Assembly: GCA_002269645.1 (NCBI GenBank)
Contig: NIVC01001665.1
Span: 1 to 64,000, forward strand
DNA from: Macrostomum lignano
Taxonomy: Eukaryota
Length of the DNA: 64,000 nt
Direction: 5' to 3'
The notes under the pieces were generated by a model. The model saw only the letters and a list, made by a program, of their open reading frames with translations. It was not told where the DNA came from and did not search any database. Below, in pieces: positions 48,387-60,375 of this stretch (positions are counted from its first letter, which is position 1; each line of letters opens with the position of its first letter). The position numbers and the translations under genes are program-made.

Positions 48387-48675
48387 TCACTTCATACTAC
48401 TAGATTTCAGACTGCCGCTTCTTCCGGCAGTTTTTGCACTTCCGCTTCCCCGTGGCGGCGCCGTCCTCAGCAGCAGCTCCGTCAGCCATGGATTCCAGCG
48501 CCTGTTCAGCGTGTTTCTTCTTCTCTCTTTCTTCTTACGGCGGTTCTTCTTTGCTGGGTTTTGCTGCTGGTTCTGTTGCTGCTGCTGCGACTTGTCGGCA
48601 GTGAATATGCTGTACTTGTTGCTTCTGCTTGCCGGATTGCTTGAAGGCCGCTTCCACGGATGCTCAGAGCAGAAG
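48387..48675 (-). CDS. NlpC/P60 gene last exon (FCSEHPW, Q/K-rich tail)
   Basis: ccggcag|C acceptor in phase 2; a possible indel in the AG-rich run. Confidence 0.7.
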
Positions 48676-57600: not shown

Positions 57601-60375
57601 TATGCAATGAATAGAAGCTATTGTACTCATTCAATCAGATTGCGCACAAAGGTGGTGGGTGCGCATTTATAAAGTGATGACTGAATTGAAATCTGTTTTG
57701 TGCAGGTGCCCAATGATCATCTCTCTACTCGGTATCAGTTTTAACAGCGATTGCCCACATCTATAGATTCATGATAATGAATATCACTCACTACTTCCCT
57801 ATCTACTTCTCACCCTACCTCATCTTTATCTGCATCTATATTGGTCTACTTCTCACCCTACCTCATCTTTATCTGCATCTATATTGGTCTACTTCTCACC
57901 CTACCTCATCTTTATCTGCATCTATATTGGTCTACTTCTCACCCTACCTCATCTTTATCTGCATCTATATTGGTCTACTTCTCACCCTACCTCATCTTTA
58001 TCTGCATCTATATTGGTCTACTTCTCACCCTACCTCATCTTTATCTGCATCTATATTGGTCTACTTCTCACCCTACCTCATCTTTATCTGCATCTATATT
58101 GGTCTACTTCTCACCCTACCTCATCTTTATCTGCATCTATATTGGTCTACTTCTCACCCTACCTCATCTTTATCTGCATCTATATTGGTCTACTTCTCAC
58201 CCTACCTCATCTCTATCTACATCTACATTTATCTACTTCTCACCCTACCTCATCTCTATCTGCATCTATATTGGTCTACTTCTCACCCTACCCCATCTCT
58301 ATCTGCATCCATATTAGTCTACTTCTCACCCTACCCTATCTCTTTCTGCATCCATATTAGTATACTTCTCACCCAACCTCATCTCTTTCTGCATCCATAT
58401 TAGTCTACTTCTCACCCTACCCTATCTCTTTTTACATCCATATTAGTATACTTCTCACCCTACCTCATCTCTTTCTGCATCCATATTAGTATACTTCTTA
58501 CCCTACCTCATCTCTATCTACATCTAAATATGAACAACTTTATTCTTAATTGCCAAGTAACAAACAAGCATTACTTAAGATATAAAAACTCTATTATTAT
58601 AAGCCAGTTTTAACTAGCATAATTCCGAATCCAATTAGCAGACAATGACAATAGAAAAAAGCCAAAAGAGACACTCAAAAAAGGGAGTTTCTCTGCACAG
58701 ATGATAGAATCCCTTCCTTTCTGTATTCCATAGACCGGTGGATGAATTATTGAATAGAAAGTTGGGAAACTTGTGCCCAATTTGCAGACAATAGAAATGG
58801 AGCTGGGATGCAGGCGGGTCGGCCCACGACAAAGAGGGGAGCAGGCAGGGAGGCAGGCAGGTGGGAGGTATTGGGGCAGCACTTAAGCCGTCCCGGCGCC
58901 TTGACAACTCTCTCACGCGCGGTAGAGGCGAGCGGCAAAAAAATTGCTTCAAATTTCCAATGCTATAGAAACTTCCATAAAAAGCATGCAAACTTGTCCA
59001 AAGCTCTATAATCATTGCCTATGCATGACAGAAATGACAAATTGGCATAAATTGCGCTTGGCCATCATCTGGCGAGCCAACTACCCCACCCCCACCATTG
59101 CGTCTGAATCATCCGTTTCTAGAATCGGCCCTCTATTCTAACGAAATCGCCCCATCTATTCTGTATACTAAAGTAGAATCGGCCCCTCTTATCACTACAG
59201 AGCCTTTGTTTTAAAATTGCCTTTGATTTTCAAAAAATAACGCCCTTGCTGTTCTTGGAATCGTCATGGTTTCTAAAGAAATAATCACCCTTGCTTTTAA
59301 TGGAAATGCCCTCTATTTTCTTAGGATTCTAAGAAAAAAAGCGATTCTCTTTCTTTTTTTCTCATAATCGCCATAGTTTTCATAGAATCGCTCTTGCCTT
59401 TAAAACAATTTAGACGCTCTTTTCTTAGAATCTCCATCGCTTTTCTTAGAAACACCCTCTCTTTTCTTGGAACCGCCGTCGCTTTTCTTAGAAACACCCT
59501 CTCTTTTCTTATAACTGCCGTCGCTTTTCTTAGAAATACCATCTCTTTTCTTATAACTGCCGTCGCTTTTCTTAGAAACACCCTCTCTTTTGTTAGAACC
59601 TCCGTCGCTTTTCTTAGAAACACCATCTCTTTTCTTAGAAATCCGTCGCTTTTCATAGAAACACCATCTCTTTTCTTAGAACCTCCGTCGCTTTTCATAG
59701 AAACACCCTCTCTTTTGTTAGAACCTCCGTCGCTTTTCTTAGAAACACCATCTCTTTTCTTAGAACTCCGTCGCTTTTCATAGAAACACCCTCTCTTTTC
59801 TTAGAACCTCCGTCGCTTTTCATAGAAACACCCTCTCTTTTCTTAGAACCTCCGTCACTTTTCTAAGAATCAGCCTCTCATTTCTTAGAACCTCCGTCGC
59901 TTTTCTAAGAATCAGCCTTCTCATCCTAAGAATCACCCTCTATTTTTTTCTAATCGCCGTCTATTTTCCTAGAATCGACCCATTGCTTTTTTAACAATCG
60001 CTCTCTCTTTCTAAGAAGTACCCAGCCACTATTTCTTAGAATTGCCATTGCTTTTCACAGAATCGCACCCTCCCTTTCTTAGAAACACATCTTTGACCCC
60101 TAAAGACGGCCACACATTCCGAGAATCAATCCCCCATAAAAATGCGAAGAGTCGCAAAAAAACAAAAGAAAAACCCACCCGATTCAGTCCAGTACTTCCG
60201 CTTGTACGGCACGCCAAAGTAGTGCCGGCACCGGTCGAGGAATTTCATTCTCAGCGACCACATCCGATCCGGGTCACGGAGTCGCGTCAGCTGAAGCTTT
60301 TTGGCCAGCTTTCTCTCCCGCTTCAGATCCTTCTGTGTTGGGATACGAATGGGCGCGGGGGTGAGACAGTTGAAG
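48387..60375 (-). CDS. Spliced NlpC/P60 (papain-like) domain protein; 4 exons found, 5' exon missing
   Basis: Exons 60375-60179, 56068-55865, 53548-53359 and 48675-48387 splice in phase (2/1/1/2). Product reads KFLDRCRHYFGVPY...LFLDCCGLVRRV...IGPWNQAY...QPGDLVF...HNMVHVEVWLGDG...TIGAR. Confidence 0.82.
49150..49330 (+). mobile_element. Possible LINE endonuclease remnant
   Basis: Weak motifs (NVYKHP..., IKIDHI) across frames. Confidence 0.3.
49765..51500. repeat. (CTAA)n microsatellite, ~1.7 kb
   Basis: Direct reading. Confidence 0.98.
52205..53290. repeat. ~22-bp minisatellite (gatctatacaatatctattgct)
   Basis: About 45 imperfect copies. Confidence 0.95.
53359..53548 (-). CDS. NlpC/P60 gene exon with catalytic His (HNMVHVEVWLGDG)
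   Basis: aacgcag| and |gtgaga; phases 1 to 2. Confidence 0.85.
53590..55740. repeat. 20-bp satellite (tctaccctactctactccaa), ~105 copies
   Basis: Very homogeneous tandem array. Confidence 0.98.
55865..56068 (-). CDS. NlpC/P60 gene exon with catalytic Cys (LDCCGLV...PGDLVF)
   Basis: atccccag| and |gtgggt; phases 1 to 1. Confidence 0.87.
56420..57140. repeat. ~20-bp minisatellite (gaaacccatagaaatcaaca)
   Basis: Imperfect tandem copies. Confidence 0.92.
57790..58530. repeat. 43-bp minisatellite (tattggtctacttctcaccctacctcatctttatctgcatcta)
   Basis: About 17 copies. Confidence 0.96.
59330..60050. repeat. ~40-bp minisatellite (ctcttttcttagaacctccgtcgcttttcatagaaacacc)
   Basis: Tandem copies that degenerate at the edges. 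Confidence 0.92.
60179..60375 (-). CDS. NlpC/P60 gene exon (LRMKFLDRCRHYFGVPYKRKYW)
   Basis: aaatccag| and |gtgggt; contains the Y/F-G-x-P-Y motif of NlpC/P60. Confidence 0.82.

What the first reader, a model, noticed from the sequence alone, without database searches (positions are those of the whole stretch)
48387..60375. Intron-containing animal NlpC/P60 papain-fold gene hidden among satellites, with an atypical catalytic triad
Seen: four exons spread over 12 kb of repeats splice into FGVPY...LDCCGLV...PGDLVF...HVEVWLGDG...TIGAR. Cys (~56031-56036) and His (~53520) are intact, but the third residue (His in bacterial IHA) aligns to Gly. Established: NlpC/P60 enzymes are mostly bacterial peptidoglycan endopeptidases; other members are amidases or acyltransferases. 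Inference: either an anciently acquired antibacterial hydrolase or a eukaryotic enzyme with a new substrate. I recall similar domains in ciliates and cnidarians, sometimes fused to tubulin-tyrosine-ligase-like domains, which would hint at tubulin modification; this needs checking.
Basis: partly seen in the sequence, partly recalled or inferred. Interest (0 to 1): 0.72.

Follow-up and report, generated by a model that had tools for sequence, protein, structure and literature searches.

The report
NlpC/P60 amidase gene linked to TTLL10
The window holds an intact, intron-split animal gene for a cysteine amidase from an uncharacterised family found in flagellated eukaryotes; in many species this same domain is fused to the tubulin polyglycylase TTLL10, which makes it a concrete candidate for the enzyme that removes glycine tags from tubulin, an enzyme the papers read here say has not been identified.

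Summary
Four minus-strand exons (60179-60332 or -60375; 55865-56068; 53359-53548; 48387-48675) have canonical AG/GT borders. They splice into a 278-aa partial protein with an NlpC/P60 fold (AlphaFold2 pLDDT 97-98; the top nine PDB fold matches are all bacterial NlpC/P60 endopeptidases). The start codon was not found.

The protein belongs to a eukaryotic family that is 45-70% identical from animals to Giardia, ciliates, Volvox and Cafeteria. Every named organism seen is flagellated. No mammal, bird, arthropod, nematode, fungus or seed plant appears among the listed hits.

Across about 240 members, Cys63, His129, Glu131 and Gln87 are invariant, and Cys64 is kept in 231 of 234. The usual third triad position is always Gly, Ala or Ser.

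38 of the 150 best cluster representatives carry a C-terminal TTL domain of the TTLL10 (polyglycylase) type. They include shark, lamprey, axolotl, lizards, snakes, sea star, annelid, nemertean, snails and protist transcripts. The window copy appears stand-alone.

The best reading is a cytosolic thiol amidase that hydrolyses the glycyl tags written by TTLL10. This is inferred, not shown. No paper found describes the family, and papers up to mid-2026 still call deglycylases unidentified.

The parts
60179..60332 (-). Exon A. It encodes KDLKRERK...DPDRMWSLRMKFLDRCRHYFGVPYKRKYWTES plus the first base of the next codon. This is the N-terminal helical hairpin and the G-x-PY motif.
   Evidence: Canonical acceptor and donor. 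tblastn hits of 1e-5 to 7e-12. No in-frame ATG lies upstream within the open frame.
55865..56068 (-). Exon B. It encodes DPEYNSPLFLDCCGLVRRV...WNQAYMFDTLP...PGDLVFIEAVYYSET. It holds the nucleophile Cys63 (56034-56036), its invariant neighbour Cys64 (56031-56033), Asn86-Gln87 and the Gly106-Asp107 'GD' motif.
   Evidence: tblastn at 1e-22 to 1e-31. Conservation figures.
53359..53548 (-). Exon C. It encodes AKKQKHNMVHVEVWLGDGPKTIGARWQKGKVQVFDSYKF...WLQGICR. It holds His129 (53520-53522), invariant Glu131 (53514-53516), Gly142 at the usual third-triad site (53481-53483) and Arg144.
   Evidence: tblastn at 1e-20 to 1e-31.
48387..48675 (-). Exon D. It encodes SFCSEHPWKRPSS...KYSIF, the family's CPEHxW and SIF motifs, then a basic Gln/Lys/Arg-rich tail and a TGA stop at 48387-48389. 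A donor-like GTAAGA at 48538 could in principle end the exon earlier.
   Evidence: My first guess for this exon (48690-48705) was wrong; comparison with homologues corrected it.
56069..60178 (-). Intron 1. It carries tandem arrays at 56419-57143 (10/20-bp unit), 57802-58526 (43-bp unit) and 59417-59974 (21/42-bp unit).
53549..55864 (-). Intron 2. About 91% of it is one array of a 20-bp unit repeated 105 times (53590-55688).
48676..53358 (-). Intron 3. It carries (AACT)n x427 at 49774-51470, a 22-bp unit x48 at 52206-53297 and a CT-rich array at 48971-49098.
47688..47699 (-). Two adjacent poly(A)-signal hexamers, ATTAAA and AATAAA, about 690 nt downstream of the stop. This is a possible 3' end of a stand-alone transcript.
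   Evidence: This is a motif match only.

Best explanation
The locus is an intact gene on the minus strand with at least four exons. It encodes a cytosolic cysteine amidase or peptidase with an NlpC/P60 fold.

The protein is a stand-alone member of a eukaryotic family whose named members are all flagellated organisms. In many animals and protists this family forms the N-terminal domain of the tubulin polyglycylase TTLL10.

Proposed mechanism (inferred):
- Cys63 sits at the start of a helix and is activated by His129 on the neighbouring strand. It attacks an amide bond in the glycine tags that TTLL10-type ligases add to glutamate side chains of tubulin tails, and possibly to other TTLL10 substrates.
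- The bond cut would be either the gamma-glutamyl-glycine branch bond or a Gly-Gly bond in the chain.
- The enzyme would thus trim or erase glycylation, acting as the hydrolytic counterpart of the ligase.
- The usual third triad residue is missing throughout the family. Invariant Glu131, two residues after His129, is the most likely substitute or a substrate-binding residue.

Shown: gene structure, fold, conservation, fusion partner and taxonomic spread. Inferred: catalytic activity, substrate and the role of Glu131.
For: **Gene.** Canonical splice sites and an uninterrupted 837-nt CDS. Every residue that is invariant in the family is present in the window copy.

**Fold.**
- The AlphaFold2 model has pLDDT 97-98 over residues 21-190.
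- The nine best PDB fold matches are all NlpC/P60 peptidoglycan endopeptidases (RipB, MepS, Acd33800, RipA, MAP1204), each with probability 1.0.
- A family profile aligns G-PY, DC(C/S)GLVR, Q-AY, GDLVF and HV(E/G)I with gamma-D-glutamyl-L-diamino-acid endopeptidases 3npf and 3pvq.

**Selection for catalysis.**
- Cys63 234/234
- Cys64 231/234
- His129 244/244
- Glu131 244/244
- Gln87 247/247
- Gly106-Asp107 246/246

**Link to TTLL10.**
- 30 of the 63 long representatives hit Pfam TTL.
- 38 carry the same TTL type C-terminal to the NlpC/P60 module.
- Sources name these proteins TTLL10 in Ambystoma, Pogona, Ophiophagus and Biomphalaria. Fusions also occur in shark, lamprey, sea star, nemertean, annelid and land snail.
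- A metatranscriptome contig gives one 815-aa ORF with both domains when read with ciliate code.
- Its TTL domain matches animal TTLL10-type domains at 1e-47 to 1e-56, against 1e-15 for TTLL7, TTLL6, TTL and TTLL3.
- The window protein's nearest relatives include the fused forms of Tubulanus, Owenia and Acanthaster.

**Taxonomic spread.** All named hits are flagellated eukaryotes.

**Precedent.** Trypanothione synthetase-amidase joins an N-terminal papain-like cysteine amidase to a C-terminal ATP-grasp ligase, and the amidase reverses the ligase's product (PMC2427367). Zhang and Aravind used the same reasoning for another papain-like domain fused to TTL-like ligases (PMC3495828).

**Gap in the field.** Deglycylating enzymes are still described as unidentified (PMC11244163; PMC12340829; PMC13308552).
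Against: - No biochemical or genetic datum exists for any member.
- The window copy has no TTL exons within 48 kb downstream, so here the link to TTLL10 is by orthology only.
- The family is not seen in mammals, birds, frogs or most teleosts. From my own knowledge, not tested here, these groups do glycylate tubulin. It therefore cannot be the universal deglycylase.
- The missing third triad residue could mean weak or altered chemistry.
- A fused hydrolase could equally act on glutamyl tags, proofread the ligase or only bind peptide.
- TTLL10 names in databases are automatic.
- My literature search covers open-access text only. Two key comparative papers (Anantharaman and Aravind 2003; Iyer et al. 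2009) could not be read.
Confidence: 0.45

Rival explanations
1. Same family and same TTLL10-linked pathway, but different chemistry. Options:
- A gamma-glutamyl deglutamylase that clears or reshapes glutamylated sites for glycylation.
- A proofreading domain that removes wrongly added residues.
- A transpeptidase or acyl-transferase, as in the LRAT branch of the superfamily.
- A peptide-binding module that positions tubulin tails.
For: - The fusion and taxonomic evidence links the domain to the ligase but does not say which bond is cut.
- The closest solved relatives cut gamma-glutamyl amide bonds in peptidoglycan.
- TTLL10 is reported to be stimulated by glutamylation (PMC12340829).
- The triad is atypical.
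Against: - Invariant Cys and His across about 240 sequences argue against a mere binding module.
- Deglutamylases of other families are already known: CCP and TMCP (PMC11244163).
- If the target were glutamate tags, fusion to a glutamylase would be expected rather than to the glycine-chain elongase.
Confidence: 0.28
2. A cytosolic amidase whose substrate has nothing to do with tubulin or TTLL10. Candidates are a small gamma-glutamyl or glycyl metabolite, or another protein modification. On this view the TTLL10 fusions reflect shared regulation or chance gene neighbourhood.
For: - Many complete stand-alone forms exist in transcriptomes and genomes.
- The window copy is stand-alone.
- One long gene model (Biomphalaria, 2183 aa with a roughly 1600-aa linker) could be a merger of neighbouring genes.
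Against: - The same domain order with the same TTL subtype recurs across distant lineages, including contiguous ORFs on short transcript-like contigs: L001, P0197 and P0172.
- All named members come from flagellated taxa.
Confidence: 0.15
3. An antibacterial or cell-wall-degrading peptidoglycan hydrolase acquired from bacteria, like the Trichomonas NlpC/P60 enzymes.
For: - The fold and motifs are those of bacterial peptidoglycan endopeptidases.
- Laterally acquired NlpC/P60 hydrolases exist in Trichomonas and free-living diplomonads (bioRxiv 10.1101/320382; PMC11437800).
Against: - By eye, the N-termini of full-length homologues show no signal peptide. No predictor was run.
- Pfam reports no wall-binding domains.
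- Identity is 45-70% across eukaryotic supergroups.
- The gene has spliceosomal introns.
- The domain is fused to a cytosolic ligase.
- No true prokaryotic carrier of the family motifs was found in 185,579 genomes.
- The family is present in parasitic Giardia and Spironucleus. PMC11437800 reports that the wall-degrading, horizontally acquired NlpC/P60 genes are absent from those genera.
Confidence: 0.04
4. In this particular genome the locus is a decaying or untranscribed copy. The start codon is missing, the C-terminal tail is unusually basic, and the gene is buried in satellites.
For: - No initiator exon was found.
- The tail after the SIF motif is basic, whereas most homologues have acidic tails.
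- There are no RNA data.
Against: - All four exons are open, with canonical splice sites.
- Every family-invariant residue is intact.
- A short first exon would easily be missed, or may lie beyond position 64000.
Confidence: 0.08

Closest known systems
Bacterial NlpC/P60 (Pfam PF00877, MEROPS C40) D,L-endopeptidases, e.g. YkfC-like 3npf/3pvq, RipA/RipB, MepS
   Same: - Same papain-like fold, with Cys at the start of a helix and His on a strand.
- Same motifs: G-x-PY, DC(S/C)GLV, Q-x-Y, GDLVF and HV-x-I/V.
- These enzymes cut amide bonds at the gamma-carboxyl of glutamate. This is the same type of bond as the branch point of tubulin glycylation or glutamylation; the comparison of bond types is my own knowledge.
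   Different: - The match to PF00877 is just below the curated cut-off (22.1 bits against 23).
- Fold similarity is moderate (TM 0.46-0.66 normalised to target length).
- DCC replaces DCS, HVE replaces HVG, and Gly replaces the third His.
- There is an extra N-terminal helical hairpin and a C-terminal C-x3-C-x2-H-x-W and SIF extension.
- No secretion signal was seen by eye, and Pfam reports no wall-binding domains.
- The family is eukaryotic and its genes contain introns.
N-terminal region of TTLL10 (tubulin polyglycylase) gene products in non-mammalian animals, e.g. Ambystoma XP_069466185.1, Pogona TTLL10 isoforms, Acanthaster XP_022100588.1
   Same: The domain is orthologous. Identity to the window protein is 58-78% per exon, these proteins are among its nearest neighbours, and all invariant residues are shared.
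   Different: - The window gene ends with a stop codon in exon D and has no TTL exons within 48 kb downstream.
- I found no paper that describes this N-terminal domain.
- The published in-vitro work on TTLL10 used Xenopus tropicalis residues 105-570 (PMC12340829).
Trypanothione synthetase-amidase and glutathionylspermidine synthetase/amidase
   Same: Same architecture and logic: an N-terminal papain-like cysteine amidase fused to a C-terminal ATP-grasp C:N ligase, where the amidase hydrolyses the amide that the ligase makes (PMC2427367).
   Different: - The amidase there is a CHAP domain acting on a small metabolite.
- No CHAP match or glutathionylspermidine synthetase fold match was found here.
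- This is an analogy, not membership.
Known tubulin tag erasers: CCP and TMCP deglutamylases; predicted transglutaminase-like ciliary peptidases (CCDC135/DRC7)
   Same: - The proposed role is the same: reversing peptide tags on tubulin tails (PMC11244163).
- A papain-like domain fused to TTL-like ligases has already been used as an argument for this role (PMC3495828).
   Different: - CCP and TMCP enzymes are metallopeptidases that act on glutamate.
- The transglutaminase-like domains are a different papain-like family.
- In the papers read here, none is described as removing glycine.
Laterally acquired eukaryotic NlpC/P60 peptidoglycan hydrolases (Trichomonas vaginalis; free-living diplomonads)
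   Same: Members of the same superfamily found in eukaryotes.
   Different: Those are recent bacterial acquisitions that target bacterial walls (10.1101/320382; PMC11437800). The present family is spread across several eukaryotic supergroups, and its motifs were found in no genuine prokaryotic genome.

Membership tests
NlpC/P60 superfamily (PF00877 / clan CL0125) | Sequence match to the PF00877 profile at or above the curated cut-off | tested here: inconclusive
   The window protein scores 22.1 bits against a cut-off of 23 (E = 1.5e-4). Several family members carry a precomputed PF00877 hit. The family profile hits PDB NlpC/P60 chains at 7e-4.
NlpC/P60 superfamily (PF00877 / clan CL0125) | Papain-like alpha+beta fold with the nucleophile Cys at a helix N-terminus and His on the following beta-sheet | tested here: met
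   The AlphaFold2 model has pLDDT 97-98. A helix starts at residue 63 and a strand spans 127-133. The top nine Foldseek PDB hits are all NlpC/P60, each with probability 1.0.
NlpC/P60 superfamily (PF00877 / clan CL0125) | Conserved catalytic Cys and His | tested here: met
   Cys63 is kept in 234/234 and His129 in 244/244 family members, and both are present in the window.
NlpC/P60 superfamily (PF00877 / clan CL0125) | Polar third triad residue (His in PF00877; other polar residues in related families) on the strand after the His strand | tested here: not met
   That position (Gly142, in TIGAR) is Gly in 229, Ala in 12 and Ser in 1 of 242 members. Invariant Glu131 is a possible substitute, but no model coordinates were available to check the geometry.
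NlpC/P60 superfamily (PF00877 / clan CL0125) | 'GD' motif on strand beta1 (PMC10318531) | tested here: met
   Gly106-Asp107 is kept in 246/246 members.
Peptidoglycan hydrolases | Export signal and/or wall-binding domains; cleavage of muropeptides | tested here: not met
   Pfam reports no wall-binding domains. By eye, homologue N-termini show no signal peptide, but no predictor was run. Enzyme activity cannot be tested with these tools.
TTLL10-associated NlpC/P60 module | Orthology to the N-terminal domain of TTLL10-type fusion proteins | tested here: met
   Fused forms from Tubulanus, Owenia and Acanthaster are among the window protein's nearest neighbours. Identity per exon is up to 78%.
TTLL10-associated NlpC/P60 module | TTL (ATP-grasp) domain encoded downstream in the same gene | tested here: not met
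   tblastn with ten fusion proteins finds no TTL exon anywhere in the 64-kb window. There is an in-frame stop at 48387. Other genes lie downstream on the same strand.
Tubulin deglycylase (functional class, no known member) | Hydrolysis of gamma-Glu-Gly or Gly-Gly bonds on tubulin tails | not testable with these tools
   The support is indirect only: the fusion, the taxonomic spread and the precedent (PMC2427367).
Glutathionylspermidine / trypanothione synthetase-amidase | CHAP-type amidase domain | tested here: not met
   Pfam gives only NLPC_P60 and a weak Peptidase_C92 hit. No glutathionylspermidine or trypanothione synthetase appears among the fold matches.

The most novel reading that the evidence does not exclude
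This family is the long-sought tubulin deglycylase. It would be a thiol isopeptidase or peptidase that removes or trims the glycine side chains on axonemal tubulin. It would have been joined early in eukaryote evolution to the polyglycylase TTLL10 as a writer-eraser pair, and later split off or lost in several lineages, including mammals.
Probability: 0.33. Interest if true: 0.92.

Novelty: new variant of a known kind. Interest (0 to 1): 0.78.

Why it matters
Tubulin glycylation marks cilia and flagella and is needed for their stability and motility. The ligases are known (TTLL3, TTLL8, TTLL10). No enzyme that removes glycine has been identified, and papers from 2024 to mid-2026 still say so (PMC11244163, PMC12340829, PMC13308552).

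A deeply conserved family with an intact catalytic Cys-His pair, fused again and again to TTLL10, turns that open question into a direct experiment. The protein can be expressed, offered glycylated microtubules, and the product read by mass spectrometry.

The finding also suggests that TTLL10 in many non-mammalian animals is a two-enzyme protein, and that published in-vitro work used the ligase part alone.

Finally, the family shows an NlpC/P60 active site that lacks the usual third residue and has an invariant Glu and a vicinal Cys pair instead. This is of interest for enzyme mechanism and possibly for redox control.

Tried and rejected
- **Wrong last exon.** My first guess was a 16-nt exon at 48690-48705 reading RQCPC*. 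Homologues continue with S-F-C-P-E-H-x-W...SIF, which fixes the acceptor at 48675.
- **N-terminal exon.** I searched 60333-64000 for the family's N-terminal 'SLQxAFxKF' exon by regular expression and by low-stringency tblastn. Nothing was found.
- **TTL exons.** None were found in the window.
- **Rfam and tRNA scans.** Nothing in the window.
- **Source organism.**
  - Exact-protein look-ups of two window ORFs found nothing.
  - A search with the neighbouring very large GTPase gave only 48-53% identity to lamprey, mussel and fish proteins.
  - The window is from an animal, but the taxon stays unknown.
- **Bacterial origin.** The only hit in prokaryotic genomes is a mislabelled eukaryotic contig.
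- **Literature.**
  - No paper combines NlpC with TTLL.
  - None of the listed papers that mention tubulin or glycylation contains 'NlpC'.
  - Anantharaman and Aravind 2003 and Iyer et al. 2009 are not held, so earlier mention of the fusion there cannot be excluded.
- **Active-site geometry.** It could not be measured because model coordinates are not exposed.

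
Full report
**1. What is in the sequence**

The gene lies on the minus strand. Reading the reverse complement shows four open segments with canonical splice borders:

| Exon | Coordinates | Borders |
|---|---|---|
| A | 60179-60332 | cacag\|AAG ... G\|GTGGGT |
| B | 55865-56068 | cccag\|AT ... G\|GTGGGT |
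| C | 53359-53548 | cgcag\|CC ... AG\|GTGAGA |
| D | 48387-48675 | ggcag\|C ... TGA |

The phases fit (1, 1, 2). The joined 837 nt translate without a stop into 278 residues.

I first mis-set exon D at a nearer acceptor. Comparison with homologues, which all continue '...GIC-x-S-x-C-P-E-H-x-W ... SIF', fixed it at 48675.

The three introns are largely tandem arrays: (AACT)427, a 20-bp unit x105 that fills about 91% of intron 2, and arrays with 22-, 43-, 42- and 10/20-bp units. The region upstream of exon A is also satellite (44-bp and 23-bp units).

No initiator exon was found up to position 64000, so the protein is incomplete at its N-terminus. Two poly(A) hexamers lie about 690 nt after the stop.

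**2. Fold and family**

- Pfam gives NLPC_P60 just under its cut-off: 22.1 bits against 23, E = 1.5e-4.
- With a 48-sequence alignment, AlphaFold2 gives a confident model. pLDDT is 97-98 over residues 21-190. A helix starts at Cys63, and His129 lies on a strand.
- Foldseek against the PDB returns nine significant matches, all bacterial NlpC/P60 peptidoglycan endopeptidases (RipB, MepS, Acd33800, MAP1204, RipA), each with probability 1.0.
- A family profile aligns the G-PY, DC(C/S)GLVR, Q-AY, GDLVF and HV(E/G)I motifs with gamma-D-glutamyl-L-diamino-acid endopeptidases.

The superfamily assignment is therefore sound.

**3. The relatives**

The spliced protein finds 215 relatives, the best at 2.6e-79. 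They are 45-70% identical across several eukaryotic supergroups. Named hits:

- Invertebrates: molluscs, annelids, a nemertean, rotifers, a sea star, Ciona, a sponge.
- Vertebrates: lamprey, shark, coelacanth, bichir, gar, paddlefish, bonefish, axolotl, turtle, lizards, snakes.
- Protists and algae: Monosiga, Cafeteria, Blepharisma, Stentor, Chromera, Giardia muris, Spironucleus, Carpediemonas, volvocine algae.
- Transcriptome entries whose labels suggest hemimastigotes.

Every named organism builds flagella or cilia. No mammal, bird, frog, arthropod, nematode, fungus or seed plant appears among the roughly 240 hits listed. A full-length orthologue in those groups would be expected near 1e-40 or better, given that Giardia scores 1e-48.

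An exhaustive profile search finds 1043 cluster representatives, 336 of them below 1e-30.

A motif scan of 185,579 prokaryotic genomes gave one confirmed hit. That contig has 25% GC, short introns and in-frame TAA/TAG codons at conserved Gln positions. It is ciliate-code DNA labelled as a Desulfobacterium MAG. By this motif scan, the family is not found in genuine prokaryotic genomes.

**4. The active site**

| Position | Conservation across about 240 members |
|---|---|
| Cys63 | 234/234 |
| Cys64 | 231/234 |
| His129 | 244/244 |
| Glu131 | 244/244 |
| Gln87 | 247/247 |
| Asn86 | 244/247 |
| Gly106-Asp107 | 246/246 |
| Tyr43 | 221/221 |
| Arg144 | 238/242 |

The position that holds the third His in bacterial enzymes (...F-I-H-A...) corresponds to T-I-G-A-R here. 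It is Gly in 229, Ala in 12 and Ser in 1 member.

Strict conservation of Cys and His argues for an active enzyme.

The best candidate to replace the missing residue is invariant Glu131, where bacterial enzymes have Gly. Thr/Ser140 is a second candidate, and a plain Cys-His dyad is also possible. This part is inference, because I could not inspect model coordinates.

**5. The fusion**

One relative (P0024) ended in a sequence that looked like the start of a TTL domain. Its 2566-bp metatranscriptome contig has six in-frame TAG codons and ends at TGA. Read with ciliate code, it is a single 815-aa ORF with the NlpC/P60 domain followed by a TTL domain (Pfam PF03133, 2.3e-36).

- Among the 150 best representatives, 63 are 400 aa or longer.
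- 30 of these hit Pfam TTL at 1e-5 or better.
- 38 carry the same TTL type C-terminal to the NlpC/P60 module.

Source names for the fusion proteins:

- 'inactive polyglycylase TTLL10': Ambystoma, Pogona.
- 'protein polyglycylase TTLL10': Biomphalaria, Ophiophagus.
- 'probable beta-tubulin polyglutamylase': Acanthaster, Heptranchias.
- Unnamed proteins: Lampetra, Tubulanus, Owenia, Candidula.
- Unnamed single ORFs on marine metagenome contigs.

The protist TTL domain matches the animal TTLL10-type domains at 1e-47 to 1e-56. Against solved TTLL7, TTLL6, TTL and TTLL3 it reaches about 1e-15, at the same database size. The partner is therefore one TTL subfamily, the TTLL10 type.

In a neighbour-joining tree, fused and unfused forms are interleaved. 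The window protein's nearest neighbours include the fused forms of Tubulanus, Owenia and Acanthaster.

Complete stand-alone ORFs also exist in transcriptomes. The window copy looks stand-alone:

- It has an in-frame stop.
- No TTL exon occurs anywhere in the window.
- Other genes lie downstream on the same strand.

**6. How it most likely works**

TTL-family enzymes are ATP-grasp ligases that add amino acids to glutamate side chains of tubulin tails, and TTLL10 elongates glycine chains (PMC12340829).

Several observations point the same way:

- A papain-like thiol amidase is fused N-terminally to an ATP-grasp C:N ligase. This is exactly the layout of trypanothione synthetase-amidase, where the amidase hydrolyses the ligase's product (PMC2427367).
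- The closest solved relatives of the present domain cut amide bonds at the gamma-carboxyl of glutamate.
- The family's spread follows flagella.

I therefore propose that the protein hydrolyses glycyl tags, either the gamma-Glu-Gly branch bond or Gly-Gly bonds, and so trims or erases glycylation.

The same kind of argument was made earlier for transglutaminase-like domains fused to TTL-like ligases (PMC3495828).

The papers I could read say that deglycylases remain unidentified (PMC11244163, 2024; PMC12340829, 2025; PMC13308552, June 2026). No paper in the searchable library combines NlpC with TTLL.

The published in-vitro study of TTLL10 used residues 105-570 of the Xenopus enzyme (PMC12340829).

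**7. Limits**

- Nothing here shows activity.
- The family is not seen in mammals, birds, frogs and most teleosts, so it cannot be the only deglycylase if those animals remove glycine at all.
- The fused hydrolase could instead act on glutamate tags, proofread the ligase or transfer rather than hydrolyse.
- Database names are automatic.
- Some long gene models may merge neighbouring genes. The contiguous protist ORFs argue that the fusion itself is real.
- Two older comparative papers that might mention the fusion were not available.

**8. Verdict**

- The gene is an ordinary member of an uncharacterised family. The family is a new variant of the NlpC/P60 kind with a specific, testable and potentially important predicted role.

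Noticed in passing
L002 = CAXXVR010000009.1:1629987-1636727 (1.72-Mb contig): The contig is titled 'MAG: uncultured Desulfobacterium sp.'. The fetched stretch has 25% GC and short introns, and it has in-frame TAA/TAG codons at conserved Gln positions of the family. It is ciliate-code eukaryotic DNA filed as bacterial.
   Followed up: partly
window 7528-14916 (+): One uninterrupted 2462-aa ORF for a URGCP/VLIG-type very large GTPase (Pfam PF25683, 3e-101). Its best relatives are only 48-53% identical (lamprey, Mytilus, fishes), so it does not identify the source species.
   Followed up: partly
window 43966-44811 (-), 38625-39305 (-), 30444-30860 (-): Downstream on the same strand as the NlpC/P60 gene lie three ORFs. 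One is a 281-aa ORF with a thiolase C-terminal domain. The other two have an SMP-like domain and a C2 domain and probably belong to one multi-exon lipid-transfer-type gene.
   Followed up: no
window 53364-53366 and 48660-48671 (residues 181-190): A conserved C-x3-C-x2-H-x-W motif spans the exon C/D junction. It is modelled with pLDDT above 95. It may be a metal-binding or structural site. This was not tested.
   Followed up: no
window 56031-56036: The nucleophile Cys is followed by a second, almost invariant Cys, giving DCC where bacterial enzymes have DCS. A vicinal thiol pair next to the active site could serve redox control. This is speculative.
   Followed up: no
window 48538 (-): A donor-like GTAAGA lies inside exon D, after the SIF motif. 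If it is used, the basic C-terminal tail would be replaced by sequence from another exon.
   Followed up: no
window 16900-17400, 20400-20960, 22170-22750, 26880-27440, 28280-28780, 37130-40650, 41730-42365, 44800-47440: Much of the rest of the window also consists of short-period tandem arrays that produce long spurious ORFs on both strands. The satellite load is not specific to this gene.
   Followed up: no
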